IMG/VR virus record: IMGVR_UViG_3300042473_001265
Location: 62,001 to 126,000 of that record
DNA length: 64,000 nt
Strand: one strand, 5' to 3'
Shown here: positions 2,773 through 45,682 of the stretch, one piece after another
Numbering within the stretch: the stretch's first letter is position 1
How the letters are laid out: each line of letters starts with the position of its first letter
Position numbers and translations under genes: made by a program
The notes under the pieces: model-generated
The model's database searches: none
What the model was told of the DNA's origin: nothing
The model's input: only the letters and a program-made list of their open reading frames with translations

Positions 2773-3054
2773 ATGAAACAGTTTGTTCGTGTATTGTGTG
2801 ATGTCAGTTGTGACTGGACAGGTACGCCGCCGGTGTACCGTGTGTATGTGGACGACGAATTGTTTGCTGAACGCACCTGGATCTGGCGTGATCAATATCT
2901 GGAAGAAGCGTTGCAAATTGAAGCTGAGCCCGGTGAATACACCATCACATATCAACTGGACAACACAGACACAGCAGTCATCCATGCTGACAACATGCGT
3001 GTGGATTATGGCACAGGCAAAATTAAAAACAATATATTAAGGATCAGCCGATGA
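2773..3054 (+). CDS. hypothetical protein
   Basis: 93-aa ORF preceded by TAAATA; stop overlaps the next start. Confidence 0.6.
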   Translation: MKQFVRVLCDVSCDWTGTPPVYRVYVDDELFAERTWIWRDQYLEEALQIEAEPGEYTITYQLDNTDTAVIHADNMRVDYGTGKIKNNILRISR

Positions 3055-3248
3055 GAGCAGCTGAATTCGTCAAAGAAGACGCCTCCGGAGGCAGCACCAG
3101 TGCTGGCTCCATTGCCCCTGTGGCCATGCCGCTAGGTGGAACGATCACAAGAACTGGTGGCAGTTTCTTTTCTGGTAAATACACAACGGATCCAACACCC
3201 AATACTCCGAGCTATATGAAAAAAGGAAAGAAACGCCGTGCTAACTGA
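3051..3248 (+). CDS. small protein with a capsid-targeting-like N-terminus (MRAAEFVKE)
   Basis: 65-aa ORF translationally coupled on both sides. Confidence 0.6.
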   Translation: MRAAEFVKEDASGGSTSAGSIAPVAMPLGGTITRTGGSFFSGKYTTDPTPNTPSYMKKGKKRRAN

Positions 3249-3678
3249 ACAACTAAAAACCTTGCTTGCAAGCCAATTTGCTTACTATTTAAAAGCTCAA
3301 TACTTTCACTGGAATGTGGAAGGATCAGACTTTGCACAACTACACAAATTCTTTCAAAAAATCTACGAAGATGCCTACAGCGCCGTGGATCCCATAGCCG
3401 AATACATTCGCAGTCTAGATGAATACGTCCCGGGCAGTCTTGCTCGTTATGCTGAATTATCAATCATACAAGATCAAACAAAAGTGCCACGGGCCAAACT
3501 GATGATACAAGAACTGCTGGCCGACAGTGAACCAATGATTGCTCTGTTAAACAGTTGCTTTGCTGAGGCAGAAGCTGAAAACAAACAGGACATTGCCAAC
3601 TTCATGGCTGAACGATTGAGTCAGCAGAACAAATATGCCTGGCAATTGCGCAGTTTCTTAAAGGACGCTAGGGAGTAA
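3238..3678 (+). CDS. dps: Dps / ferritin-like DNA-protection protein
   Basis: Dps signature YFHWNVEG..F..LH.FF..IYE...D.IAE.IR; GTG start. Confidence 0.85.
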   Translation: MLTEQLKTLLASQFAYYLKAQYFHWNVEGSDFAQLHKFFQKIYEDAYSAVDPIAEYIRSLDEYVPGSLARYAELSIIQDQTKVPRAKLMIQELLADSEPMIALLNSCFAEAEAENKQDIANFMAERLSQQNKYAWQLRSFLKDARE

Positions 3679-36082: not shown

Positions 36083-36897
36083 AAAAGAAATTAATGGTAG
36101 CAGGTTGCAGTTTCAGTGCGCCAACAAAAAGCAACGACGGTACCAGCTGGAGTGAGGTACTGGCAGCTAGACTGGGCTGGGACTTGGTCAATCTGGCCAG
36201 ACAGGGCTGTAGCAACGGCGGCATCAGAATCCAAATGGAAGAGATTCGCAAACAACAGCCGGACTTTGCCATTGTCACTCCCACATTCTGGGATCGCATG
36301 GAGATTCCAGCAAACTCAGCACCGTACGACTGGACGCAACCGCCCAGCCGTGGCGAAGGCCCACCACTGGAAAAGCATCTACAAGATCGTACACGCGGCA
36401 ATGGTTACCGGCGAGAAGACGGCCTGAAAAATGTCAACTATGGCAAAGAACCCAGCAATATGATTTGCGAAACCATCTTTACCCTGGCAGAAAATTTTGA
36501 TCATCCTTACAGAATGGCTCGCATCAGCCGAGATGCACAACGCGGCGTACAGGCCTGGATTGACAGCATCTACGACAATGCTTGGAAAAAACAACAGGAC
36601 GAATGGATCATACACGAAGGTATTTTACAAATGTATCACGATGGATTAAAGTTTCTAGTACAGCCTGTGTTGCTGTGGCCATTTGACCATGCCAATGAGC
36701 ACCAATGGCGCAATGCATTTAATAAAGTGATCCCTGATCATTACATCATGCTAGACCAAGCAGAAAGTGTACTTGCTGCTTATAGCCGCTACCCGTTTGT
36801 GGGCGAAGATCCTGGATATCACACCAGCCCTGCAGGACAGGCAGCCATAGCAGACAATTGGTATCGACGTATTACTCAAGACCATGGCATCAGTTGA
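36079..36897 (+). CDS. SGNH/GDSL-like protein
   Basis: LMVAGCSFS, GCSN and GYHTSPAGQ motifs. Confidence 0.55.
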   Translation: MKKKLMVAGCSFSAPTKSNDGTSWSEVLAARLGWDLVNLARQGCSNGGIRIQMEEIRKQQPDFAIVTPTFWDRMEIPANSAPYDWTQPPSRGEGPPLEKHLQDRTRGNGYRREDGLKNVNYGKEPSNMICETIFTLAENFDHPYRMARISRDAQRGVQAWIDSIYDNAWKKQQDEWIIHEGILQMYHDGLKFLVQPVLLWPFDHANEHQWRNAFNKVIPDHYIMLDQAESVLAAYSRYPFVGEDPGYHTSPAGQAAIADNWYRRITQDHGIS

Positions 36898-37603
36898 TCA
36901 CTTGGTTGTGAATGGTTGCAGTTATATGGAAGCATATGCTGCTGGCAATGGCCATGTGGATTTGGCCGAGCGCCTAGGCATGAACACTTCGGAAAGTTTG
37001 GCCATTGGCGGCAGCGCCAACACTCGTATTATTCGCACCACACTCAAACACAGTTACCAGACAACACAGCCGACCTTTTATGTACTGGGAATGACTTTCT
37101 TAAGCCGACTGGAAATACCGATCCTGGAAAATCAGTCTGAGTTTGAAGGACGTTGGACCAATCCGCAGAATCAACAGTTTGCCAAACACTGGCAGTACGG
37201 CTGGGGTGCGGCAGAAACAGATCAATTTGTAGACATCAAATTAAAAAGTGAAATCTACAGCATACTGGATCGCACTGAGGATCTGATGTATAAAATTGTT
37301 TCCATGATTGCTGACTTGAAGCAGCGTGGACACCGTGTGCTGGTGTATCAACAGGCCGACGATGTGTATCAGCATTGCATTCATGACCCTAGGCTTGACC
37401 TGTTCAGGAAAACTACTAACATCTTGGGCGGCTATGCCTGGCTGGCCGTTGAATGGCAACACATGCAAGGTGTTCCGGCTATGAACTACGGCAATACCCC
37501 CATACACCTGGTGCCCGACACAATGAGACATCGTGAGTCCGGGCACCACCAGGTGTTGAACAGCTTTTTAATTGATTATATCAAGCAACAGCAGTTGGTG
37601 TAA
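36884..37603 (+). CDS. SGNH/GDSL-like protein
   Basis: LVVNGCSYM, GSAN and RHRESGHH motifs. Confidence 0.55.
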   Translation: MASVDHLVVNGCSYMEAYAAGNGHVDLAERLGMNTSESLAIGGSANTRIIRTTLKHSYQTTQPTFYVLGMTFLSRLEIPILENQSEFEGRWTNPQNQQFAKHWQYGWGAAETDQFVDIKLKSEIYSILDRTEDLMYKIVSMIADLKQRGHRVLVYQQADDVYQHCIHDPRLDLFRKTTNILGGYAWLAVEWQHMQGVPAMNYGNTPIHLVPDTMRHRESGHHQVLNSFLIDYIKQQQLV

Positions 37604-38603
37604 CCACGGTTCGGCCACCGCAACTGTTGACACATCCATACAGTCTGCCGGCGGCAATGCTGTCCTTTTTCCAGGTTTCTTCCACTGCATTGAACCACTC
37701 AATACAGTGTTCAAGGCTGTGCTCTAGTGCATTGTTTTCTTTGATCAAGGGCAACAACTGTTGATTGCCGGGATGATTCATTGTGGTCGGATAGAACCCC
37801 AGGAAGCAACAGGGATACACTGTTGCGTCAGCAGCAATATAAATTTCTTTTAGTCGGTTGTGCTGACAAGTGATATTCAAGGGCTGACAATCTTTATCAA
37901 TTTTTACAGTGGCAGGATCAAACCATGTGAGATGACTTTGCAACAAAGGTTTGATGTCGGGTGTGCCTGAATCATACGGTTGGCCGATGTGATGAGTAAA
38001 TTCACCTGTACGAGTAAATGCTGGGCCACGGTTGCGTCCTTCGTCAATGTTTTCAAATCTGGCAAATCCCAACTCTTTGGATAATTTTTTGCAGTCTGTT
38101 TGCTGATGACGATTATGGTCAAATGGAACAAATCTCCAGATGGCATGGCCGCCAGCACGAATAAATGCCGTGGCGTTTTCAATGACTCGATTCCAATCTG
38201 TATCCAAGCGGTATAGACTGTGTGTGTCGGCTAACCCATCCAGTGCAAATCCAATGCGAACGCCGGGTCGTGCCAACGCAGCCCACCAGTCAGGTGTACG
38301 CATACTGCCATTGGTGTTGATATAAACTGGTACTGCTAGATCTGCCAAGTAGTGTACAATTTCTTGAGCATCGCGAGCCAATCCAAAATCCCCGAGATTT
38401 CCATTGAAACTTACACCAGATGTTAGTTGCTGTAAGAAACTCACAGGAAGTATTTGTTTAATGTTGTCCAGGGTTAATTCAGTAACTGGATATCCAGAAT
38501 TAAACTCCAGACCACGATAGTTCCGCATACACATGGGACAACGAGCATTGCAACGGGTAGTTAATTCAATTTGTACTTGACGAATGTCAGAAAGTCTCAG
38601 CAT
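37581..38603 (-). CDS. radical SAM protein with a C-terminal SPASM/twitch-like region
   Basis: CNARCPMC (CxxxCxxC), INTNGS, YPCCFL and CVNSC motifs. Confidence 0.85.
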   Translation of the reverse strand: MLRLSDIRQVQIELTTRCNARCPMCMRNYRGLEFNSGYPVTELTLDNIKQILPVSFLQQLTSGVSFNGNLGDFGLARDAQEIVHYLADLAVPVYINTNGSMRTPDWWAALARPGVRIGFALDGLADTHSLYRLDTDWNRVIENATAFIRAGGHAIWRFVPFDHNRHQQTDCKKLSKELGFARFENIDEGRNRGPAFTRTGEFTHHIGQPYDSGTPDIKPLLQSHLTWFDPATVKIDKDCQPLNITCQHNRLKEIYIAADATVYPCCFLGFYPTTMNHPGNQQLLPLIKENNALEHSLEHCIEWFNAVEETWKKDSIAAGRLYGCVNSCGGRTVVTPTAVA

Positions 38604-38656
38604 AAAATATTTATGGATTATAATTGTTGTTTGATATAAAAGATAAATAAATCATA

Positions 38657-38764
38657 ATGAATACCATTCACTCACTCTTGTCCTCTTTGTGTATCTCGAA
38701 CACAGGGCTATCTGCGTCTTTGAGACTAGAACAGTTCCGGATCCCGAATGGTTGGCACAGTTAA
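38657..38764 (+). CDS. leader peptide 1 (Ser/Leu-rich, 35 aa) of a putative tRNA-operon attenuator
   Basis: MNTIHSLLSSLCISNTGLSASLRLEQFRIPNGWHS: 7 Ser and 6 Leu; followed by a terminator. Confidence 0.7.
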   Translation: MNTIHSLLSSLCISNTGLSASLRLEQFRIPNGWHS

Positions 38765-38791
38765 AATAATTTAACAACCCAAACTTCAAGG

Positions 38792-38820
38792 ACCCTGGAA
38801 CTAAAAACTCCGGGGTTTTT
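38792..38820 (+). terminator. attenuator terminator 1
   Basis: ACCCTGGA-N9-TCCGGGGT plus T run; AGTTCC at 38733 can pair instead with GGAACT at 38797. Confidence 0.75.
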
Positions 38821-38845
38821 CATTATGCACTACAAGGAGAACTGT

Positions 38846-38893
38846 ATGACCGCAGAAGAATATTGGAAATGGTTACATGACAATGTACAATAA
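38846..38893 (+). CDS. 15-aa micropeptide MTAEEYWKWLHDNVQ
   Basis: Strong AAGGAG SD at 38834; first ORF after terminator 1. Confidence 0.45.
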   Translation: MTAEEYWKWLHDNVQ

Positions 38894-38898
38894 AGCAG

Positions 38899-38927
38899 TT
38901 GACACAGATTGCTGACTGTGCTACAAT
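38899..38927 (+). promoter_or_regulatory. sigma70-type promoter of tRNA block 1
   Basis: TTGACA-N17-TACAAT. Confidence 0.75.
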
Positions 38928-38936
38928 AGACAATTG

Positions 38937-38984
38937 GCAACAAACGATCGAGTAGTTGCTGTACAGTTCATTAATATAAAATTT
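38937..38984 (+). promoter_or_regulatory. boxB-like hairpin plus boxA-like antitermination element
   Basis: GCAAC-AAACGATCGAGTA-GTTGC, then GTTCATTAATATAAAATTT; the same loop recurs at 42764. Confidence 0.5.
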
Positions 38985-39005
38985 AGATAAGTTAATACAA
39001 GCAAT

Positions 39006-39095
39006 GGAAGCGTGGCAGAGTCCGGTTTATTGCAGCAGTCTTGAAAACTGCCGGCTCGAAAGGGTCCGTGAGTTCGAATCTCACCGCTTCCACCA
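39006..39095 (+). tRNA. tRNA-Ser(TGA)
   Basis: Cloverleaf with long variable arm, loop CTTGAAA, encoded CCA. Confidence 0.95.
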
Positions 39096-39104
39096 ATGCA
39101 ATTT

Positions 39105-39179
39105 GCGGCCATAGTATAACGGATAATACAGCGGTCTTCTACACCGTGAATGTGGGTTCGATTCCTGCTGGCCGCGCCA
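39105..39179 (+). tRNA. tRNA-Arg(TCT)
   Basis: Loop CTTCTAC, T-loop GGTTCGATTCC, CCA. Confidence 0.93.
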
Positions 39180-39184
39180 AACAT

Positions 39185-39270
39185 GCCCCCATAGACAAAT
39201 TGGTAAAGTCACTCTCCTCAAAAGGGAGTATTTTAAAAAAATCTGAGTTCGAATCTCAGTGGGGGCACCA
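39185..39270 (+). tRNA. tRNA-Leu(CAA)
   Basis: Loop CTCAAAA, AT-rich variable arm, CCA. Confidence 0.9.
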
Positions 39271-39311
39271 ATGGTTGACAAAGATCAACAAACAAGTTAT
39301 AATAGAACAAT

Positions 39312-39398
39312 GCTCTGATGGTGAAATAGGTAGACACAAGAGACTTAAAATCTCTCGCTCGCAAGGGTGTGCCGGTTCGATTCCGGCTCGGAGCACCA
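39312..39398 (+). tRNA. tRNA-Leu(TAA)
   Basis: Loop CTTAAAA, long variable arm, CCA. Confidence 0.95.
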
Positions 39399-39441
39399 TT
39401 TAAATAAGTCAGTTAATCAAGTTAAATTAAAGAAAGCAATC

Positions 39442-39615
39442 ATGACCCCAACAAAAACTTTTAAGTTCAGCAAGCGCAACAAAACATTGATGACCTTGCT
39501 GCCATTCAAAGATCAAACCATACGCAATGCGTTCAAGCGCATGATGGTTGATGCACAGCTATGCAGCGGTGTTGTTGTCAAAAGCAGCAAGGATCGTGGC
39601 ACAGATAGCAAGTAA
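39442..39615 (+). CDS. small basic hypothetical protein within the tRNA block
   Basis: 57-aa ORF MTPTKTFKFSKRNK... between two Leu tRNAs. Confidence 0.55.
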   Translation: MTPTKTFKFSKRNKTLMTLLPFKDQTIRNAFKRMMVDAQLCSGVVVKSSKDRGTDSK

Positions 39616-39623
39616 AGATATAT

Positions 39624-39700
39624 GCCCTGGTGGTGAAATTGGTAGACACAGCGGTCTTAGAAGCCGTAAGCTGAGAGTTCGAGTCTCTCCTAGGGCACCA
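39624..39700 (+). tRNA. tRNA-Leu(TAG)
   Basis: Loop CTTAGAA, short variable arm, CCA. Confidence 0.9.
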
Positions 39701-39722
39701 AGTATATAAAAGCAATCACACT

Positions 39723-40196
39723 ATGCCAAAATGTTATCAACTGATCGGAGTGCCTGCATCGGGCAAAACCACTTGGTACCGTAACCAAGAGTGGTTGGGT
39801 GAAGATAAAAAAGATCACAAGTATGTGTCCACAGATCAGCATGTGGAAGGATATGCCAATGATCAAGGCAAAACCTACAGTGAAGTGTTTGAGGAATACA
39901 TGCCCACTGCTGTCAAACAGATGCTGATAAATGTTAACATGGCTGCGGCATATCAGTTAGATATTGTTTGGGATCAGACCAGCACCACAGTTAAAAGCCG
40001 TCGAAAGAAGTTTGTTGAGTTGCCCAACTATGAGCACATTGCTGTGGTATTTCGGACACCCGATGCACCGGAACATGCTCGCAGATTAAACAGTCGTCCG
40101 GGCAAGCACATTCCTGATGAAATAGTACAAGATATGATCATCAAATTTGAAATGCCTACCGAAGAAGAAGGGTTTGTTGAAATCTGGCATGTGTAA
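39723..40196 (+). CDS. P-loop kinase (AAA_33 / polynucleotide-kinase-like)
   Basis: LIGVPASGKTT and IVWDQTS..R motifs. Confidence 0.85.
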   Translation: MPKCYQLIGVPASGKTTWYRNQEWLGEDKKDHKYVSTDQHVEGYANDQGKTYSEVFEEYMPTAVKQMLINVNMAAAYQLDIVWDQTSTTVKSRRKKFVELPNYEHIAVVFRTPDAPEHARRLNSRPGKHIPDEIVQDMIIKFEMPTEEEGFVEIWHV

Positions 40197-40203
40197 TACT
40201 GGG

Positions 40204-40689
40204 TTAGGCTCTGGATAGCATTACCAGGCTGAGAAAAAATGCCGGAATTGCAATGGCCACAAAACAAGAAAACACAAGAAATGTTTGTAATATGTCTTCT
40301 TGTGCTTTGCGATTGGCTGCTGCCATTTTTCTTTCAACTTCTGCTCGTTCTTTGTACATACGCACTCGCTCGGACTGCATTTGATCCCAGACATCTTTGT
40401 TGCCGGACCAGATCAGCATTTCTTTAAGTTCTTTTTCAGCGTCCCGCAGTGCTTTGCTGTGCATGGCAGTTTGCAAAGATCTTGAAGCAATTTCTCCATT
40501 GCTCAGCAAAGAAGTAGAATTCATCAGCTTGACATTGGCCACATAAACTTTGTCGCAATTTTGAAAAAATGAACTAAACTGTCCGTATAAGCTGTTGATG
40601 TCTTTGCCCATGGCAATGGCTTTTTTAATGCCGCCAATTGCTTGCTGTGCCGCAGTGAATGCCAGGCCAATTGTCACAGGGTCAATCAT
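40204..40689 (-). CDS. hypothetical protein with hydrophobic termini
   Basis: 161-aa ORF MIDPVTIGLAF..., coupled to 40686-40880. Confidence 0.6.
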   Translation of the reverse strand: MIDPVTIGLAFTAAQQAIGGIKKAIAMGKDINSLYGQFSSFFQNCDKVYVANVKLMNSTSLLSNGEIASRSLQTAMHSKALRDAEKELKEMLIWSGNKDVWDQMQSERVRMYKERAEVERKMAAANRKAQEDILQTFLVFSCFVAIAIPAFFLSLVMLSRA

Positions 40690-40880
40690 GATCGTAGAAT
40701 ATAAGGTTTAAATTGCTTTTCCCAGCGTCGACACCAAACTTCTCTATTGGGAGCTTGGCCCGACCAACTCCACAGTGTACACACCCATTGTTCATTCTTG
40801 TCTAATTTTTCCGTTGGTGGTGCCACAGCATTTAATGCTGTAGAGCCTGCCAACAACACAAACAACAAAGAATATTTCAT
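40686..40880 (-). CDS. small secreted hypothetical protein
   Basis: Signal-peptide-like N-terminus and a WVCTLWSW..WCRRW motif. Confidence 0.55.
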   Translation of the reverse strand: MKYSLLFVLLAGSTALNAVAPPTEKLDKNEQWVCTLWSWSGQAPNREVWCRRWEKQFKPYILRS

Positions 40881-40926
40881 TTACTATATTTAACTATAGT
40901 ACGATATAATTACAACAGCCGTTTGA

Positions 40927-40955
40927 TTGACTGCAAAGCCACAATCTGCTATAAT
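40927..40955 (+). promoter_or_regulatory. sigma70-type promoter
   Basis: TTGACT-N17-TATAAT before the phosphoesterase gene. Confidence 0.7.
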
Positions 40956-40986
40956 ATAGGTTACAACGCAAGAAAAGGAGGGCAAG

Positions 40987-41589
40987 ATGCCTAGTGTATT
41001 TTTAGTCAGCGACACGCACTTTGGACACATGGGTGTATGCCGCTTTACCCGCAACGATGGTGTCACCAAATTACGCCCGTGGGATAGTGCTGAGGAAATG
41101 GACGAAGCCATGGTCACGGCCTGGAACAAACGAGTTAAACCCACGGACAAGGTATATCACTTGGGTGATGTGGTTATAAACCGCAAAGCATTAAAGACTC
41201 TGGCCAGATTGAACGGCGACAAGGTGTTAATCCGTGGCAACCATGATATCTTCCGTGATGAAGAGTATCGTGAATACTTTCGTGAATTACGGGCGTACCA
41301 TGTGATGAACGGCATGATCCTTAGCCACATTCCTGTACACAGTGACAGCTTGGGGCGTTTTGGCGTCAACATACACGGACATACTCACGCAAATCGTGTA
41401 CGCAAAGCCCGTGGAGTTGATGCTAGAACTGGTGAAATCTTGTACAGCGACGAGATTGATCCACGCTATCATTGTGTATGCGTGGAACAGACTGACTTTG
41501 CACCGATACTGTTTGAAGATGTGATCAAACGCATCGAAGCAGAAGGTGGGTCAGTGGGTTTTCGTAACGGCAATGGTCCTACAATGTAG
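40987..41589 (+). CDS. calcineurin-like metallophosphoesterase
   Basis: SDTHFGH, HLGDVV, IRGNHD, LSHIP and HGHTH motifs. Confidence 0.92.
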   Translation: MPSVFLVSDTHFGHMGVCRFTRNDGVTKLRPWDSAEEMDEAMVTAWNKRVKPTDKVYHLGDVVINRKALKTLARLNGDKVLIRGNHDIFRDEEYREYFRELRAYHVMNGMILSHIPVHSDSLGRFGVNIHGHTHANRVRKARGVDARTGEILYSDEIDPRYHCVCVEQTDFAPILFEDVIKRIEAEGGSVGFRNGNGPTM

Positions 41590-41604
41590 GCCTGGAATTT
41601 TAAA

Positions 41605-41682
41605 GTAGCGGTGGCAGAGAGGCCCAATGCAAGGGATTGCAAATCCCTAAAACCGTGAGTTCGAATCTCACCCGCTACTCCA
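41605..41682 (+). tRNA. tRNA-Cys(GCA)
   Basis: Loop TTGCAAA, U73, CCA. Confidence 0.93.
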
Positions 41683-41803
41683 GTTAATTCACAGTTGAAT
41701 TTTAAAGAGTAAATAGAGTAGTCAGAGTGCAGGCTCTTTTTAAATCCTGCCTTTGTGTGGTACCGAGCAATGCTCCTGCTTGTATAAGCATCGGTACACT
41801 ATT

Positions 41804-41877
41804 GCGGGATTCGTAAAATGGTATTACCTTAGATTTCCAATCTAAAGTCGGGGGTTCGATTCCCCCATCCCGCTCCA
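41804..41877 (+). tRNA. tRNA-Gly(TCC)
   Basis: Loop TTTCCAA, U73, CCA. Confidence 0.93.
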
Positions 41878-41906
41878 GTTTTTATGTTGATCGATTTGAG
41901 AAAATT

Positions 41907-42407
41907 ATGCAAACCATTAATCTTGTAAAAGTAAAACAATTCATAGAAGCACAAGGCCCAATGACTCGCATCTATTTGGGTTGCGACAGCGAACGAATCC
42001 GAATCAACAACGAATGGTGGGCCGATTACACACTGGCCATTGTGGTGCATATCAACGGCAACAGCGGATGCAAGATATTTGGCGAAGTGTGCCGCGAGCG
42101 TGACTATGATCAAAAAACTGCACGGCCCAGCATGCGACTGATGAACGAAGTGTACAAAGTTTCTGACATGTATCATCGGCTGGGCGAAGTGCTGAACGGC
42201 CGAGAAGTGGAAGTACACTTGGACATCAATCCAGACGAACGCCACGGATCCAGCTGTGTGATTGCACAGGCCATTGGCTATATAAAAGGAACCTGCAACA
42301 TAACACCATTGGTCAAACCCGAAGCGTTTGCTGCCAGTTATGCTGCGGATCGCTTCAAAGGATTGGCCACTGCACGACATCGTGTTCGAGTCAATGAACG
42401 AGTTTAG
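41907..42407 (+). CDS. RNase H-like YkuK/DUF458 family protein
   Basis: IYLGCDS, RLMNEVYK, EVHLDIN and AASYAAD pattern. Confidence 0.75.
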   Translation: MQTINLVKVKQFIEAQGPMTRIYLGCDSERIRINNEWWADYTLAIVVHINGNSGCKIFGEVCRERDYDQKTARPSMRLMNEVYKVSDMYHRLGEVLNGREVEVHLDINPDERHGSSCVIAQAIGYIKGTCNITPLVKPEAFAASYAADRFKGLATARHRVRVNERV

Positions 42408-42494
42408 GAAGTGTGGCTGAGTGGCCTAAGGCAGCTGATTACTAATCAGTCATATCGCAAGGTATCGTGGGTTCGAATCCTACCACTTCCGCCA
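42407..42494 (+). tRNA. tRNA-Ser with the rare anticodon ACT
   Basis: Ser-type long variable arm and G73; stem GCTGA/TCAGT with loop TTACTAA; CCA. Confidence 0.85.
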
Positions 42495-42500
42495 ATGTTA

Positions 42501-42526
42501 AAAAGGCTACTTTGATAGCCTTTTTT
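42501..42526 (+). terminator. intrinsic terminator after tRNA-Ser(ACT)
   Basis: AAAAGGCTA-ctttga-TAGCCTTTTTT. Confidence 0.7.
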
Positions 42527-42561
42527 CTTGACTTTTAAACAAAAGGCATATATAATACACT

Positions 42562-42660
42562 ATGATTACGCAAATCACATTCACTGCTAACAACACGCCG
42601 GCCATCTATGAGATAGCCTATGAGCGTGATTGTCCCAGGGGTCTTTGCCATTGTAGTTAA
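42562..42660 (+). CDS. leader peptide 2 (32 aa) of a putative tRNA-operon attenuator
   Basis: MITQITFTANNTPAIYEIAYERDCPRGLCHCS; TATAAT at 42549 suggests a near-leaderless start. Confidence 0.7.
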   Translation: MITQITFTANNTPAIYEIAYERDCPRGLCHCS

Positions 42661-42682
42661 CAAAAGTACTACATTCACAAAG

Positions 42683-42707
42683 ACCCGCTAACTAGGCGGG
42701 TTTTTTT
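42683..42707 (+). terminator. attenuator terminator 2
   Basis: ACCCGC-taactag-GCGGGT plus T6; GGGTCTTTG (42639) pairs perfectly with CAAAGACCC (42678), which overlaps the stem. Confidence 0.8.
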
Positions 42708-42717
42708 ATGGCGCTGG

Positions 42718-42746
42718 TAGACACAAAATCGCATCAGTGCTATAAT
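42718..42746 (+). promoter_or_regulatory. sigma70-type promoter of tRNA block 2
   Basis: TAGACA-N17-TATAAT. Confidence 0.65.
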
Positions 42747-42760
42747 ACACACATAACAGC

Positions 42761-42801
42761 AGCAAACGATCGAGTAGCTGAAGAGAATTCTTTAAAAATT
42801 T
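42761..42801 (+). promoter_or_regulatory. boxB-like hairpin plus boxA-like element
   Basis: AGC-AAACGATCGAGTA-GCT, then TTCTTTAAAAATTT resembling rrn boxA (TGCTCTTTAACAATTT). Confidence 0.55.
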
Positions 42802-42830
42802 ACTAATATTTTTTCTTGCTACGGCAAGAA

Positions 42831-42964
42831 ATTATATTGAAACACATTTTCAATCTGAATTGACAGATACAAACAACCAAGGGGAGCCGCTGGACTTGAG
42901 CCAGGTTCATCCTGAATTGACAGGAACAAGGTTGTAAGGGGAGCCGAGTGCGTTTCAATATAAT
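42831..42964 (+). ncRNA. inverted-repeat-bounded RNA cassette with an internal direct repeat
   Basis: ATTATATTGAAACAC...GCGTTTCAATATAAT arms; two CTGAATTGACAG...AAGGGGAGCCG units inside. Confidence 0.55.
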
Positions 42965-42970
42965 AAATTT

Positions 42971-43045
42971 GGAGCATTCGTCTATCGGTTAGGACAGTGG
43001 GTTTTCAGTCCACTAAGAGCGGTTCGACTCCGCTATGCTCTACCA
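42971..43045 (+). tRNA. tRNA-Glu(TTC)
   Basis: Loop TTTTCAG, CCA. Confidence 0.92.
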
Positions 43046-43052
43046 TGTTTTT

Positions 43053-43139
43053 GGATGTGTAGGAAAATTGGTAACCCCAGGAGACTGTAAATCTTCCGTC
43101 GTAATGGCATTGTTGGTTCAAGTCCAACCTCATCCACCA
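43053..43139 (+). tRNA. tRNA-Tyr(GTA)
   Basis: Loop CTGTAAA, variable arm, CCA. Confidence 0.93.
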
Positions 43140-43142
43140 AAT

Positions 43143-43370
43143 ATTTCTCGTCAGAGCCCTAATGCAAATCCTGTGGGCGATGAATTAACAAGGCTGCATA
43201 GATGCTTGCAGTATATTGTCGGTGAAGTTCCGACCGGGAAACGAAATCAAGTGGAAAGCAAGAGCCACAAAGTAAACACCGCCGGGTCAGAAAATGTGTC
43301 CGGGACGTATGGGTCGCGCAGCCTATACAAACAACGGTGGGGTAAGAGTCCTCATAACATTTTCACAAAT
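43143..43370 (+). ncRNA. unidentified multi-hairpin RNA candidate
   Basis: Hairpins GCCC/GGGC, CTGCA/TGCAG, GTCGG/CCGAC, GTGG/CCAC and CACCG/CGGTG between two tRNAs. Confidence 0.4.
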
Positions 43371-43373
43371 TTA

Positions 43374-43448
43374 GGTGCGTTCATATAACGGTCATTATCC
43401 TGGATTGTCTATCCAGAGACGGGAGTTCGACTCTCCCACGCATCGCCA
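43374..43448 (+). tRNA. tRNA-Asp(GTC)
   Basis: Loop TTGTCTA, G73, CCA. Confidence 0.92.
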
Positions 43449-43456
43449 AGTTAACA

Positions 43457-43533
43457 GGCCCTTAGCTCATGTTGGTTAGAGCAGCAGACTCATAATCTGT
43501 TGGTGCTGTGTTCGACTCACAGAGGGCCTACCA
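43457..43533 (+). tRNA. tRNA(CAT), probably Ile2 (lysidine type)
   Basis: Loop CTCATAA; GGCCCTT acceptor resembles E. coli ileX. Confidence 0.8.
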
Positions 43534-43539
43534 AGTTTT

Positions 43540-43712
43540 GGTTAGTTGGAAATGAAAGTAACCCAAAGGGAGCGCTCTGAACAGGCGCTGCTTAGTACGC
43601 CTTACAAAAGTAATTGTCCTGACTGTTCGACCCAAGAGGTGTTTACCCGTAGATTAAGTTCCTACGCTCTCGCTCAAGGGATGTCGCTGTGTCGCAACAG
43701 CACTAACCACCA
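43540..43712 (+). ncRNA. 173-nt RNA with a tRNA-like acceptor stem, T-like arm and ACCA end
   Basis: GGTTAGT/ACTAACC 7-bp stem plus A-CCA; GCTGT-gtcgca-ACAGC hairpin directly before the 3' strand. Confidence 0.5.
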
Positions 43713-43777
43713 AGTTTAAGAGTTCGTCTAGAAACCGGTAAATTGTAGTTTGGTCTACAAGCTCTTAATTAGTTTAT

Positions 43778-43870
43778 GGTGTCATAGGATGTAACGGGGT
43801 GCGGTTTGCCTCAACCTTGAATGATCATCAAGGTTTTCTTGCGTGGGTTCGAATCCCACATGATGCCCCA
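43778..43870 (+). tRNA. atypical tRNA-like RNA with a non-canonical core
   Basis: GGTGTCA/TGATGCC acceptor, canonical T arm GTGGG-TTCGAAT-CCCAC and CCA; central 8-bp AACCTTGA/TCAAGGTT hairpin. Confidence 0.55.
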
Positions 43871-43941
43871 AATTTGCAGTTTTTGTCTGGAGTAATATTC
43901 CTGGACACGGATAAAAACAGAAATGTTCTGCGCCAAGTTAT

Positions 43942-44011
43942 GCCCTGGACTGTGTTGCGAGTCAGATTTGAAGCTGAACGTAGACAGGTTTAATTCCTGT
44001 TAGGGGCGCCA
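43942..44011 (+). tRNA. degenerate tRNA with a reduced D arm, identity unclear
   Basis: T arm ACAGG-TTTAATT-CCTGT, GCCA end, imperfect acceptor and anticodon arms. Confidence 0.4.
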
Positions 44012-44014
44012 AGT

Positions 44015-44238
44015 TTTGTTAGAGTGTTAGCAAGAGAAAGTCACGCTGTCTAGGTTTCTTCGAAGGACCAAAACAGTAGAAGGTTGCGGGTTCGATGCCC
44101 GGCTGATCGCTTGAGTGGGATCGGCATACATGACGGCGTATCAACTGGACCGGTATCCCAAGTAACTTACCGACTCCCGCTCGAGCTTGTTAATTCGGGT
44201 GAATGGCAGCAATAACGTGGTGCTGCTACTCTAACAAA
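44015..44238 (+). ncRNA. 224-nt structured RNA candidate closed by an 11-bp stem
   Basis: TTTGTTAGAGT/ACTCTAACAAA; internal hairpins and a T-loop-like GGGTTCGATGCCC. Confidence 0.45.
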
Positions 44239-44246
44239 TTCAATAT

Positions 44247-44336
44247 GCCAGCGAGACTTGGAGTCCGAGGGGTCTTATATGCCCTTTCCGCCAGATTAGC
44301 GGCTTTGAGAGAGTTCGATTCTCTCCGCTGGTACCA
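44247..44336 (+). tRNA. tRNA with anticodon TAT (nominal Ile), long variable arm and minimal D loop
   Basis: GCCAGCG/CGCTGGT-A-CCA; loop CTTATAT; CCGC/GCGG variable arm; D arm GACT-tgg-AGTC. Confidence 0.75.
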
Positions 44337-44378
44337 GATCGTGTTGGATAAACTTTTTATCAGTTTATCCAAAACAAT

Positions 44379-44407
44379 TTGACAAGCAAAGATGTTTGTC
44401 ATACAAT
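44379..44407 (+). promoter_or_regulatory. sigma70-type promoter with a palindromic spacer
   Basis: TTGACA-N17-TACAAT; TGACAAGCA/TGTTTGTCA inverted repeat. Confidence 0.7.
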
Positions 44408-44420
44408 AGATACTTACTTG

Positions 44421-44526
44421 ATATTGTTGAGCACATTAGCCTGACTGAAACGGGCATCGAGTACGTGGGGCGTGAAAGAAGGTTCGATTCCTTCATACTC
44501 AATTTCAGTGGTGTGTTCAACAATAT
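44421..44526 (+). ncRNA. inverted-repeat-bounded RNA cassette with a T-arm-like hairpin
   Basis: ATATTGTTGAGCACATT...GGTGTGTTCAACAATAT; internal GAAGG-TTCGATT-CCTTC. Confidence 0.55.
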
Positions 44527-44547
44527 AAAGTTTGGTAAAATTAGGTG

Positions 44548-44576
44548 TTGACAAGTTCAACAGTTGATGTTACAAT
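44548..44576 (+). promoter_or_regulatory. sigma70-type promoter of the large ncRNA
   Basis: TTGACA-N17-TACAAT. Confidence 0.75.
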
Positions 44577-44582
44577 AAGATT

Positions 44583-45476
44583 CCGGGGCAGTTTAATGTC
44601 CTACTAGGCAGCTTGCTGTCTAGTGAAGAATAACTGTGGTGACACAGCCAAAGGAGGTATGCCTACATAACTCCGCCAGCAACGGTTCGTTTAGACAAGC
44701 CTGCTCAGACTCGCGAGAGTCCCTTCACTGATAAGACCGGTGGAGGTAACAATGACGCTGGATGTTGTGGAAAGAACGTCGGCTTACCGGCCCGCAAGGG
44801 TAACCGGAGCAGATGGAAAGTAACAGGTGGTGCTGACTTCACAACAAAACCAGTCCAGTTAATTGGCATGAGAAAGGGTAGTGTATCGGTCCGAGGGGTT
44901 GCACCCAAGGGCTTGTATGCAGTTTGAGTGGTCAGTGGAGGCTGTCGAAAGGCGGGGTCAACACAGATCGCAAAAGACGTCTGAGTAGTTCGCAAGACAA
45001 AAGGAACGTGGTGTGTTGTATTGTGTAGAGCAAAACTTTATGCAGCAACTGAGTCAGCACATCGCAGTAGGTTCGTTATAGCTCAATTGGTAGAGCAACT
45101 CCCTGTTAAGGAGTAGGCAGACGGTTCAAATCCATCTAACTATTAAAAAGCAAAGACTGACTCGGTCGTATGTGAAAAGCATCTAATACTTGGCTCGCAA
45201 GAGAATCAAGTCAGACGTAACTCGCAAGGTGAAATCTGTTTATGCAGGAAGTTTCGTAACTGTTTAGCGACAGTGAATGGCTCTAAAGGTCAACGGGATA
45301 GAAAGCGTAGAATAGCATATGGCGACAAGACTACTGCCTGTCTTTAAAAACGGCGATGCTGGCAACAGACCAGGAAACCTGCAAGGGTCTTGGTGGAAGT
45401 CGGAAGAAAGCGGTCTCGCAAGGATCGTAATAATGTCCGAGGTGTTGTTGGGTAAGCATGTATTCTCAGTGCTCCA
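44583..45476 (+). ncRNA. large (about 0.9 kb) structured RNA, GOLLD-like
   Basis: No credible ORF; own promoter; many GCAA/GAAA tetraloop hairpins; tRNA-array location. The GAGTAG..GCAAG..AAAGGAACGTGGTGTGTTGTATT segment resembles GOLLD as I recall it. Confidence 0.6.
45072..45144 (+). pseudogene. degenerate tRNA-Asn(GTT) embedded in the large ncRNA
   Basis: D arm TAGCTCAATTGGTAGAGC, ACTCC-CTGTTAA-GGAGT and T-loop GGTTCAAATCC; broken acceptor stem, no CCA. Confidence 0.65.
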
Positions 45477-45477
45477 C

Positions 45478-45538
45478 TATTCTAAAACACATTAAGCTGA
45501 TGCGGGCTGCAATGCCGCAGATAGTGTGTTTCAGAATA
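45478..45538 (+). ncRNA. inverted-repeat-bounded RNA cassette
   Basis: TATTCTAAAACACATTA...TAGTGTGTTTCAGAATA. Confidence 0.55.
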
Positions 45539-45552
45539 GATAAATAAACTAC

Positions 45553-45628
45553 CGCGGGAAGGGTCCGGTCACCGGCAGGGTCTCATAAGCCTTCGCAATC
45601 CTTGGTTCAAATCCAAGTCCCGCTACCA
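45553..45628 (+). tRNA. tRNA(CAT), probably initiator fMet
   Basis: CGCGGGA/TCCCGCT with an unpaired first position; loop CTCATAA; CCA. Confidence 0.75.
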
Positions 45629-45646
45629 ATAACAAATCATCGGTGG

Positions 45647-45675
45647 TTGACACAGAATGATAAATAACATACAAT
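45647..45675 (+). promoter_or_regulatory. sigma70-type promoter (with embedded ATAAATA) for leader 3
   Basis: TTGACA-N17-TACAAT. Confidence 0.75.
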
Positions 45676-45682
45676 AGGATTT

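What the first reader, a model, noticed from the sequence alone, without database searches (positions are those of the whole stretch)
38640..38820. Leader 1 is Ser/Leu-rich and uses the codons read by the five downstream tRNAs
Seen: the 35 codons include TCA, TCC, TCT x3, TCG, TTG x3, CTA x2, CTC and AGA. Downstream tRNAs are Ser(TGA), Arg(TCT), Leu(CAA), Leu(TAA) and Leu(TAG). AGTTCCGG (38733) can pair with the CTGGAACT terminator arm. The 19-mer AAACTTCAAGGACCCTGGA is identical in attenuators 1 (38781) and 3 (45829), which indicates common origin. ATAAATA at 38643 may be a late promoter, and there is no clear SD, so the leader may be near-leaderless (inference).
Basis: partly seen in the sequence, partly recalled or inferred. 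Interest (0 to 1): 0.82.

Follow-up and report, generated by a model that had tools for sequence, protein, structure and literature searches.

The report
Translation-coupled terminator switch before phage tRNAs

Summary
The element is real and belongs to a conserved family. It has a short ORF (28-53 codons) whose last 7-9 codons run through the 5' strand of a rod-like helix (P1a GGGUCC:GGACCC, P1b GARG:CUUC). The stop codon lies in a small hairpin (P2) inside that rod. An intrinsic terminator follows, and its 5' arm shares CCC with P1. I found 26 distinct copies carrying the same 19-mer, and more divergent copies through the peptide. Both P1 and the terminator show compensatory changes. Every copy with enough flanking DNA has a same-strand tRNA cluster within 1.5 kb downstream. 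No Rfam, Pfam or PHROG family matches, and no paper was found.

The most likely mechanism is ribosome-mediated attenuation. A ribosome finishing the ORF melts P1, so the terminator forms. A stalled or absent ribosome lets P1 form, so transcription reads through.

The codon-matching idea fails across the family (enrichment 1.16 versus 0.99), and for this copy it is within the range of random small ORFs (8-13%). Two consensus sigma-70 promoters lie between this terminator and the five tRNAs. ATAAATA is a conserved promoter-spacer motif, not an enriched late promoter. This copy is the most divergent member.

The parts
38631..38658 (+). Sigma-70-like promoter TTGATA-16-CATAAT (10 of 12 matches). 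The -10 overlaps the ORF's ATG.
   Evidence: for the promoter. GATAAATAA occurs 3 times against 0.58 expected, all in the tRNA region; the same spacer motif is in paralogs L007, L011, L225, L226 and the second window copy.
38657..38764 (+). ORF1, 35 codons, the most divergent member of the small-ORF family. It lacks the family's invariant Trp and the Asp of the DRxPE motif.
   Evidence: pN/pS against the ortholog L014 is 0.32 in this frame and 0.66 and 2.18 in the other two, based on only 12 differences. The peptide HMM built from canonical members does not detect it.
38733..38744 (+). 5' strand of the antiterminator P1 (AGUUCCGG-A-UCC), inside ORF1 codons 26-30.
   Evidence: The covariance model matches 38731-38821 at 64.2 bits, E about 1e-12.
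38760..38775 (+). P2 hairpin GUUAAA-AUAA-UUUAAC, which contains the ORF1 stop codon UAA (38762-38764).
   Evidence: A stop codon lies inside P2 in all 33 family members examined.
38784..38802 (+). 3' strand of P1 (CUUC-AA-GGACCC-UGGAACU), which overlaps the terminator's 5' arm.
38793..38820 (+). Intrinsic terminator: CCCUGGA, a 9-nt loop, UCCGGGG, then U5.
   Evidence: Hairpin -13.6 kcal/mol. Covariation across the family reached by 0 of 500 shuffles.
38834..38894 (+). Strong SD (AAGGAGA) and a 15-codon ORF. This is a truncated remnant of the ORF2 that follows the terminator in most family members. It is conserved in L014.
38899..38927 (+). Consensus promoter TTGACA-17-TACAAT with an upstream TG, lying between the terminator and tRNA-Ser.
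   Evidence: Conserved as TTGACA-17-TATAAT in L014.
39006..39700 (+). Five tRNAs: Ser(TGA), Arg(TCT), Leu(CAA), Leu(TAA), Leu(TAG). A second consensus promoter lies at 39275-39303, before Leu(TAA).
45647..45868 (+). Promoter TTGACA-17-TACAAT (45647-45675). Leaderless ORF1 of 43 codons (45683-45814). P1a 45786-45791 pairs with 45838-45843. P1b 45794-45797 pairs with 45832-45835. Terminator 45841-45868.
   Evidence: Covariance model 93.3 bits. Full transcript MFE -60.6 kcal/mol, z -4.4, with the P1 rod.
45885..46250 (+). Downstream cargo of the paralog: ORF2 (56 aa, 45885-46055) and a covarying structured RNA block of about 190 nt (about 46046-46250).
   Evidence: 13 of 27 predicted pairs show compensatory changes across 7 loci.

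Best explanation
This is a ribosome-dependent transcription attenuator that heads transcription units in phage tRNA arrays.

How it is built: a promoter drives a short ORF (ORF1). In many copies the promoter ends 6-7 nt before the ATG, which gives a leaderless mRNA. The last 7-9 codons of ORF1 are also the 5' strand of a long imperfect helix: P1a, a small internal loop, then P1b. The stop codon sits in hairpin P2 at the tip of that helix. The 3' strand of P1 shares CCC, and often UGG, with the 5' arm of an intrinsic terminator.

How it most likely works:
- On naked RNA, P1 folds first and blocks the terminator, so RNA polymerase reads on into ORF2, a structured RNA and the tRNAs.
- A ribosome that keeps pace with the polymerase and translates to the stop codon melts P1 and P2 and sits between the two P1 strands. 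The terminator then forms and transcription ends.
- The downstream genes would therefore be turned up when translation of ORF1 is slow, stalled or absent.

Shown here: the two mutually exclusive structures and their covariation, the ORF and its geometry, and the link to tRNA clusters.
Inferred: that the ribosome decides between the two structures, and what signal is sensed.

The copy at 38640-38820 is a divergent and partly decayed member. Its peptide is shortened, its ORF2 is truncated, the structured RNA is gone, and its tRNAs have their own promoters. At most it adds read-through transcripts to those tRNAs.
For: Family:
- The 19-mer is exact in 15 IMG/VR loci and 31 metagenome loci (one a chance hit), giving 26 distinct elements.
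- A peptide HMM finds 110 representatives at the 50% identity level, nearly all 41-53 aa. Their loci carry the same RNA architecture with changed sequence.

Structures:
- P1 is 96% paired, with 4 pairs and 14 cells compensatory and a covariation score reached by 0 of 500 shuffles. It peaks sharply against slid registers.
- The terminator is 90% paired, with 3 pairs and 6 cells compensatory, 0 of 500.
- Examples: GGGUUC:GAACCC, GGAG:CUCC, CCCCAGG:CCUGGGG, CCCUAAG:CUUAGGG, and a wholly different P1 in L250.
- RNAalifold returns P1 on one alignment and the terminator on another.

Energetics:
- P1 is favoured by 2-10 kcal/mol in most members. The nascent RNA, before the terminator's 3' arm is made, folds into P1 at -20 to -36 kcal/mol.
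- With about 125 nt of upstream sequence included, P1 is dominant in 24 of 33 members.

The RNA constraint is independent of coding: GGGUCC is read in two different frames, as R-V-R or as G-S/G-F.

The ORF is real:
- It is open in every member.
- pN/pS is 0.31-0.54 in frame, against 0.66-2.2 out of frame.
- Third-position variation occurs within the conserved DRTPE motif.

Geometry:
- P1a start to stop codon: 20-27 nt in the 30 members where the automatic frame call picked ORF1. For this copy it is 23 nt (38739 to 38762), counted by hand.
- Stop codon to the 3' strand of P1a: 23-34 nt.
- Stop codon always lies between the two P1 strands.

Context:
- Every member with enough DNA, except L208, has a same-strand tRNA cluster within 1.5 kb.
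- In L004, L007 and L011 the only consensus promoter nearby is the one before ORF1, and there is none between the terminator and the tRNAs.
Against: - There is no transcript evidence. Three metatranscriptomes show zero depth over 38585-38781, and no RNA run holding the element was listed.
- In this window, consensus promoters lie downstream of the terminator, so control of these five tRNAs by the switch would be partial at best.
- For this copy the two states are nearly isoenergetic (-22.7 versus -22.2 kcal/mol). The MFE z-score is only -1.7 to -1.9. With the whole ORF included, the terminator dominates at equilibrium.
- The conserved peptide motifs (invariant W, near-invariant D, R, P, E) are more than a simple speed-sensing leader needs. 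They could mean the peptide has its own function.
- 26 of the 33 aligned sequences were found with the 19-mer itself, so the covariation rests on about 7-9 divergent sequences. The alignment was also fitted to P1 by the model.
Confidence: 0.55

Rival explanations
1. One reading: this copy specifically senses the supply of the Ser, Leu and Arg tRNAs encoded just downstream. Ribosomes stall at hungry TCN, TTG, CTA or AGA codons, which frees the antiterminator.
For: - 8 of 34 codons are read by the five tRNAs, against 9% in the window's long ORFs (p 0.009).
- TCT-TTG-AGA-CTA (38717-38728) lies directly 5' of the P1 strand (38733), which is where a stalled ribosome would leave that strand free.
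- The run is unchanged in the ortholog L014, and the L-to-S and S-to-L changes there keep the composition.
Against: - There is no enrichment across the family: 1.16 for a copy's own cluster, 0.99 for mismatched clusters.
- Near-identical peptides precede different tRNA sets. L226 is followed by Lys/Met/Gln and L231 by Tyr/Glu/Asp.
- 8-13% of random small ORFs in the window match as well.
- Ser, Leu and Arg are the six-codon amino acids, so random ORFs are rich in them.
- Two consensus promoters lie between the terminator and these tRNAs.
- TCT is read by tRNA-Ser(UGA) only with a modified U34.
Confidence: 0.1
2. ORF1 encodes a sensor or arrest peptide. The conserved W...DRxPE motif stalls the ribosome 12-16 nt upstream of P1, perhaps in response to a metabolite or to damage of particular tRNAs, and the stall switches on read-through.
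For: - W is invariant and D, R, P, E are near-invariant across 49 representatives.
- The Pro codon lies 12-16 nt 5' of P1a in all 20 canonical members. This matches the 3' edge of a ribosome with that codon in the P site (established toeprint distance of about +15/16).
- The peptide is predicted to be unstructured: pLDDT 58 and no secondary structure.
Against: - The two window copies and the L007-type lack the motif but keep the switch.
- The W-to-D spacing varies by about 8-14 residues.
- The fixed distance may only reflect homology.
- No resemblance to a known arrest motif was tested or found.
Confidence: 0.2
3. ORF1 is an ordinary small protein gene with its own terminator. The P1 rod is an mRNA stability or RNase III processing element, and its overlap with the terminator has no regulatory role.
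For: - The peptide is under purifying selection and has conserved motifs.
- The rod is a long imperfect duplex of the kind RNase III cuts in phage transcripts (general knowledge, not tested here).
- In six members the terminator dominates at equilibrium.
Against: - The P1 3' strand and the terminator 5' arm always share CCC, and both helices covary around that shared segment. That is hard to explain without competition between them.
- The stop codon always falls inside the rod.
- Several loci have no promoter for the downstream RNA and tRNAs.
Confidence: 0.15
4. The P1/P2 rod is a ligand-binding or tRNA-binding riboswitch (T-box-like), and translation is irrelevant.
For: The single-stranded and loop nucleotides (AAAC, AA, the UAAAAAC loop) are conserved among the 19-mer group. 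The element sits in tRNA arrays.
Against: - No Rfam family matches, even at E up to 10.
- The UGGA after P1, which could pair with a tRNA NCCA end, is not conserved in divergent members (AGGA, UAAG, UAGG, AGAA).
- The internal loop varies from 1 to 3 nt on the 5' side and from 2 to 4 nt on the 3' side.
- The P2 sequence varies freely.
- A riboswitch does not explain why the ORF always ends in P2.
Confidence: 0.05

Closest known systems
Leader-peptide (ribosome-mediated) transcription attenuators of enterobacterial trp, his, leu, thr, ilv and pheA operons, and of pheST
   Same: A short ORF in a leader transcript. An intrinsic terminator and a mutually exclusive antiterminator. The ORF overlaps the structure, so ribosome position chooses the fold. 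The stop codon lies about 55 nt before the end of the terminator.
   Different: - No run of regulatory codons.
- No conserved 1:2 anti-antiterminator, so untranslated RNA is predicted to read through rather than terminate.
- The peptide is long (about 47 aa) and conserved in sequence.
- The cargo is a small ORF, a structured RNA and tRNA genes in a phage, not biosynthetic enzymes.
pyrBI attenuator (44-codon leader)
   Same: A long leader ORF. The outcome depends on how closely the ribosome follows the polymerase, not on one amino acid.
   Different: In pyrBI the ribosome runs into the terminator hairpin and prevents termination. Here the ORF ends before the terminator, and the ribosome is predicted to promote termination by melting the antiterminator.
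Arrest or sensor leader peptides (TnaC, SecM, SpeFL, Erm leaders)
   Same: A conserved short peptide with a few invariant residues (W, D, P in TnaC; W, D, R, P, E here), placed upstream of a regulated transcription or translation event.
   Different: No sequence similarity was shown. The spacing of the invariant residues varies. TnaC acts through Rho and the stop codon. Stalling was not tested here, and the window copies lack the motif.
T-box riboswitches
   Same: An antiterminator/terminator choice linked to tRNA biology.
   Different: No Stem I or specifier. No T-box sequence. No conserved UGGN bulge. No Rfam hit. An ORF is present.
rnTrpL/peTrpL of Sinorhizobium (PMC6614838, PMC7968998)
   Same: An attenuator whose terminated RNA and leader peptide may each have functions of their own. 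This is a possible parallel for the conserved ORF1 peptide and the terminated RNA of about 165-190 nt.
   Different: This is an analogy only. No trans function was tested here.

Membership tests
Ribosome-mediated (leader-peptide) transcription attenuator | A short ORF in the transcript upstream of the regulated genes | tested here: met
   An ORF of 28-53 codons is present in all 33 members. In-frame pN/pS is 0.31-0.54. Independent gene calls exist in 110 clusters.
Ribosome-mediated (leader-peptide) transcription attenuator | An intrinsic terminator between the ORF and the downstream genes | tested here: met
   A GC-rich stem of 6-8 bp followed by U5-7. Covariation reached by 0 of 500 shuffles. 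Hairpin energies of -12.9 and -13.6 kcal/mol. Function as a terminator was not measured.
Ribosome-mediated (leader-peptide) transcription attenuator | An alternative antiterminator helix that excludes the terminator | tested here: met
   P1 shares CCC (and often UGG) with the terminator arm. 96% paired, with compensatory changes. Energies.
Ribosome-mediated (leader-peptide) transcription attenuator | The ORF overlaps the switch, so ribosome position selects the fold | tested here: met
   The 5' strand of P1 lies inside the last 7-9 codons and the stop codon lies inside P2 in all members. This is geometry only.
Ribosome-mediated (leader-peptide) transcription attenuator | Regulatory codons that match the regulated pathway or tRNAs | tested here: not met
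   Family enrichment is 1.16 against 0.99 for mismatched clusters. The same peptides precede different tRNA sets. For this copy the result is inconclusive: p 0.009 against genes, but 8-13% of random ORFs match as well.
Ribosome-mediated (leader-peptide) transcription attenuator | Termination responds to translation of the leader | not testable with these tools
   No RNA coverage of the element. This needs reporters or coupled in vitro transcription-translation.
T-box riboswitch | Stem I with a specifier, a T-box sequence, and a UGGN bulge pairing with the tRNA NCCA end | tested here: not met
   No Rfam hit at E up to 10. UGGN is not conserved in divergent members.
Any described RNA family (Rfam 15) | A covariance-model match at or near the gathering score | tested here: not met
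   The best hit is NsiR1 at 14-16 bits against a gathering score of 39, and it matches the terminator only.
T4-type late promoter | TATAAATA about 6 nt upstream of the start site, recurring before many late genes | tested here: not met
   TATAAATA occurs once in 64 kb against 1.15 expected, and not here. GATAAATAA occurs only 3 times, twice in the spacer of a sigma-70-like promoter (win1, win3) and once just upstream of the tRNA-like sequence at 45553.
RiPP precursor of the neighbouring radical SAM/SPASM enzyme (37581-38603, minus strand) | Conserved co-location of the precursor peptide with its maturase | tested here: not met
   The radical SAM gene is a neighbour only for this copy and L014. 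Other members have glycosyltransferase, ClpP or TctC genes upstream.

The most novel reading that the evidence does not exclude
The module is a translation-stress sensor that gates phage tRNA supply. ORF1 acts as a sensor peptide whose W...DRxPE motif parks the ribosome just upstream of the antiterminator when decoding is impaired, for example when host anticodon nucleases or starvation deplete tRNAs. That switches on transcription of the phage's own tRNA array and its associated structured RNA. It would be the first leader-peptide attenuator known to control tRNA genes, and the first in a phage tRNA array.
Probability: 0.2. Interest if true: 0.9.

Novelty: new variant of a known kind. Interest (0 to 1): 0.68.

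Why it matters
- How large phages regulate their tRNA arrays is essentially unknown. A conserved ORF-coupled terminator switch at the head of these arrays gives a concrete and testable control point.
- If translation of ORF1 sets read-through, phage tRNA output would be fed back from the state of the host's translation machinery. That bears on why phages carry tRNAs at all: codon supply or defence evasion (compare PMC11555353).
- The element also defines three unannotated families in uncultured freshwater jumbo phages: a peptide of about 47 aa (at least 110 clusters at 50% identity), the RNA switch, and a downstream RNA of about 190 nt.
- It is small enough, under 200 nt, to test directly in reporters.

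Tried and rejected
- Known RNA family: none matched at gathering or E-value thresholds.
- Known protein family for ORF1 or ORF2: none in Pfam or PHROGs. The ESM Atlas gave only sub-threshold hits. There is no homolog in GenBank phages.
- ORF1 fold: the AlphaFold model is low-confidence (pLDDT 58), so I ran no fold search.
- The 19-mer as a phage-specific promoter: rejected. There are only two copies per 340-kb genome and it is followed by a terminator.
- Late promoter: rejected.
- T-box-like pairing with the tRNA NCCA end: rejected.
- RiPP precursor: rejected, because the neighbouring genes are not conserved.
- A third copy ('attenuator 2') in the window: none found. The best extra model hit is at 42631-42707, E 0.85, and there is no extra peptide hit.
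- A trp-like 1:2 pairing in this copy (ACCAUUC:GAAUGGU): not conserved in L014, so probably fortuitous.
- Transcript evidence: the runs found are DNA, or RNA without coverage of the element.
- Searches that gave mostly chance matches: the gapped pattern, the N-pattern (one real variant, L208) and genome contigs (one hit inside a coding region).
- The search for related loci with the peptide alignment failed because no stretch was conserved enough.
- Literature: four searches found no description.

Full report
**Observation.** The window is part of a very large uncultured lake-water phage. Its family-B DNA polymerase is at most 49% identical to those of Sinorhizobium phage Phosso and Agrobacterium phage Atu_ph07, and the source runs are lake metagenomes. 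It carries a tRNA array: 30 tRNAs, a permuted tmRNA and a GOLLD RNA between 39006 and 49767.

- the 35-codon ATG ORF at 38657-38764, with the stated Ser, Leu and Arg codons;
- the five downstream tRNAs;
- AGTTCCGG at 38733, complementary to CTGGAACT at 38795;
- the 19-mer at 38781 and 45829, with 0.03 matches expected by chance;
- no Shine-Dalgarno sequence;
- a terminator hairpin, CCCUGGA/UCCGGGG plus U5, at 38793-38820.

**A family, not a one-off.** The exact 19-mer occurs in 15 viral contigs and 31 metagenome contigs. One metagenome hit (L238) is a chance match. This gives 26 distinct elements. Each of the 30 distinct copies with enough upstream sequence has an ATG ORF of 28-51 codons ending in TAA, 17-25 nt before the 19-mer.

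A profile built from these peptides finds 110 representatives in a library clustered at 50% identity, nearly all 41-53 aa. Their consensus is M..T....H....AKQaGFMPxYWSAIN..SNDRTPEi..(R/G)(V/S)(R/Q)EG. Trp is invariant, and D, R, P and E are near-invariant. The loci that encode these more distant peptides carry the same RNA architecture with different sequence.

No Rfam, Pfam or PHROG family matches. No cultured phage in GenBank has the peptide. The one hit in cellular genomes is a chance match inside a coding region. Four literature searches found nothing.

**Anatomy.** From 5' to 3':
- P1a, GGGUCC pairing with GGACCC.
- A small internal loop.
- P1b, GARG pairing with CUUC.
- P2, a hairpin of free sequence that always contains the stop codon.
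- The 3' strands of P1.
- A terminator whose 5' arm, CCCUGG(A), reuses the CCC of P1a.

The two folds therefore exclude each other. RNAalifold returns P1 on one alignment and the terminator on another.

On a 33-sequence model-based alignment:
- P1 is 96% paired, with 4 pairs and 14 cells changed on both sides. Its covariation score is reached by 0 of 500 shuffles, and it peaks sharply against slid registers.
- The terminator is 90% paired, with 3 pairs and 6 cells compensatory, 0 of 500.
- Concrete cases: GGGUUC:GAACCC (L252, L256, L259); GGAG:CUCC (L253, L254); CCCCAGG:CCUGGGG (L248, L250, L258); CCCUAAG:CUUAGGG (L252); and UUUCGA:UCGAAG replacing the whole inner part of P1 in L250.

Two caveats apply. 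26 of the 33 sequences were found with the 19-mer itself, so the covariation comes from the 7-9 sequences reached through the peptide. The alignment was also fitted to P1.

GGGUCC is read as R-V-R in some members and as G-S or G-F in others, so it is constrained as RNA and not as protein.

**The ORF is translated.**
- It is open in every member.
- Pooled pN/pS is 0.31, 0.54 and 0.32 in frame for three subfamilies, against 0.66-2.2 in the other frames.
- The DRTPE codons vary at third positions.
- AlphaFold gives no fold: pLDDT 58 and no secondary structure.

**Energetics.**
- For the 90-nt element, P1 is favoured by 2-10 kcal/mol in most members. The nascent RNA, before the terminator's 3' arm is made, folds into P1 at -20 to -36 kcal/mol.
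- With about 125 nt of upstream sequence, P1 dominates in 24 of 33 members.
- The copy at 45683-45868 folds into the P1 rod at -60.6 kcal/mol, z -4.4.
- The copy under review is the weakest. The two states are -22.7 and -22.2 kcal/mol and the z-score is -1.7. With the whole ORF included, the terminator dominates.
- Its P1a has an A.C mismatch (GGAUCC).

**Context.**
- Every member with enough flanking DNA, except L208, has a same-strand tRNA cluster within 1.5 kb downstream.
- Usually an ORF2 of about 50-60 aa with a strong SD, and a structured RNA of about 190 nt (13 of 27 pairs compensatory), lie in between.
- In L004, L007 and L011 the only consensus sigma-70 promoter nearby is a perfect or near-perfect one ending 6-7 nt before the ORF1 ATG. 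None lies between the terminator and the tRNAs.
- There, the downstream RNA and tRNAs plausibly depend on read-through of this terminator.

**Mechanism (inference).**
- Established ribosome dimensions put the 3' edge of the ribosome about 15-16 nt from the first base of the P-site codon, and the 5' edge about 12-15 nt behind it.
- Where the automatic frame call picked ORF1 (30 of 33 members), P1a starts 20-27 nt before the stop codon. For this copy it is 23 nt (38739 to 38762). The 3' strand of P1a starts 23-34 nt after the stop codon.
- A ribosome translating the last codons, or sitting on the stop codon, therefore melts P1b and P2 and lies between the two P1a strands. P1 cannot close and the terminator can form.
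- The stop codon lies about 55 nt before the last U of the terminator, which is compatible with a closely following ribosome.
- If the ribosome is absent, or is held further upstream, P1 forms first and the polymerase reads through.
- The outcome would be more ORF2, structured RNA and tRNA when ORF1 translation is slow.
- In the 20 canonical members, the Pro codon of DRxPE lies 12-16 nt upstream of P1a. That is where a stalled ribosome would just spare the antiterminator. This is suggestive of a programmed pause, but it may only reflect homology.

The general idea, a leader ORF with an attenuator linked to tRNAs, is supported at family level. The specific claims are not.
1. Codon matching. The enrichment of codons read by a copy's own downstream cluster averages 1.16, against 0.99 for mismatched clusters. 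Near-identical peptides precede different tRNA sets, for example L226 versus L231. For this copy, 8 of 34 codons match, against 9% in the window's genes (p 0.009). However, 8-13% of random 30-45-aa ORFs in the window do as well. The run TCT-TTG-AGA-CTA directly 5' of the P1 strand is intriguing, and it is conserved in L014, but given the peptide's composition it is not significant.
2. Promoters. In this window two consensus promoters lie between the terminator and the tRNAs, at 38899-38927 (also present in L014) and at 39275-39303.
3. Late promoter. ATAAATA belongs to GATAAATAA, a spacer motif conserved in the family's sigma-70-like promoters. TATAAATA is not enriched.
4. Start site. The -10 hexamer CATAAT overlaps the ATG. 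At the position where the paralogs have their leaderless ATG, this copy has ATT (38666). Whether the 38657 ATG is transcribed at all is open.

This copy looks like a decayed paralog:
- it is the lowest-scoring family member against the RNA model (64 bits);
- its peptide lacks the invariant W and D and is missed by the canonical peptide profile;
- its ORF2 is cut down to 15 codons;
- the structured RNA is absent.

It is nevertheless conserved in a second phage (L014).

**Transcript data.** Twenty-one DNA runs hold the region. Three metatranscriptomes hold parts of it but have zero depth over 38585-38781, and their tRNA coverage comes mostly from other organisms. No RNA run holding the element itself was listed. 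The start site and termination are therefore untested.

**Verdict.** The finding uncovers an undescribed, covariation-supported ORF-coupled antiterminator/terminator module at the head of tRNA arrays in uncultured freshwater jumbo phages. The Ser/Leu codon-sensing reading of this particular copy is unlikely, at about 0.1.

Noticed in passing
window 45008-45472: GOLLD RNA (RF02032, 197 bits) with tRNA-Asn(GTT) embedded at 45071-45145. A second GOLLD is in related locus L010 at 2987-3452.
   Followed up: partly
window about 46046-46250; also L003, L004, L007, L008, L011, L013 between the terminator (or ORF2) and the first tRNA: A conserved structured RNA of about 190 nt with no Rfam match. 13 of 27 predicted pairs show compensatory changes across 7 loci. 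Its 3' end abuts the first tRNA in several loci, which suggests co-transcription and RNase P processing.
   Followed up: partly
window 45885-46055 and 38847-38894; L247 2050-2211, L250 1710-1871, L257 2229-2408: A second small ORF family (ORF2, about 50-60 aa, strong SD) immediately follows the terminator in most members. It has no Pfam or PHROG match. In this copy it is truncated to 15 codons, but that remnant is conserved in L014.
   Followed up: partly
window 45553-45625: A tRNA-like sequence (Rfam tRNA 19.9 bits, below the threshold of 29) that ARAGORN does not call. It has a CAU anticodon-like loop and is preceded by a third GATAAATAA at 45539.
   Followed up: no
window 49362-49767: A permuted tmRNA with an unusually long predicted tag peptide. 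Related loci carry betaproteobacterial-type tmRNAs (RF01850), which hints at a betaproteobacterial host.
   Followed up: no
window 36500-51000, + strand: Eleven near-perfect sigma-70 promoters (11-12 of 12 matches), all on the + strand within the tRNA region. In this phage many tRNA sub-clusters therefore have their own strong host-type promoters.
   Followed up: partly
window 39723-40196, 40987-41589, 41907-42407: An AAA_33 / polynucleotide-kinase-like ATPase, a calcineurin-like phosphoesterase and an RNase H-like (PF04308) protein are interspersed with the tRNAs. This may be an RNA repair or processing set.
   Followed up: no
window 37581-38603 (minus strand): A radical SAM protein with a weak SPASM match, divergent from the small ORF. 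The pairing is not conserved in other family members.
   Followed up: partly
window 38689-38769: A second, GTG-started 26-codon ORF in another frame also ends inside P2 (TAA 38767-38769). Its pN/pS against L014 is 0.66, compared with 0.32 for the ATG frame.
   Followed up: partly
window 49835-50077 and 50186-51088: An Ala/Lys/Pro-rich repeat ORF with a signal-like N-terminus and a porin-like ORF lie just after the tRNA array.
   Followed up: no
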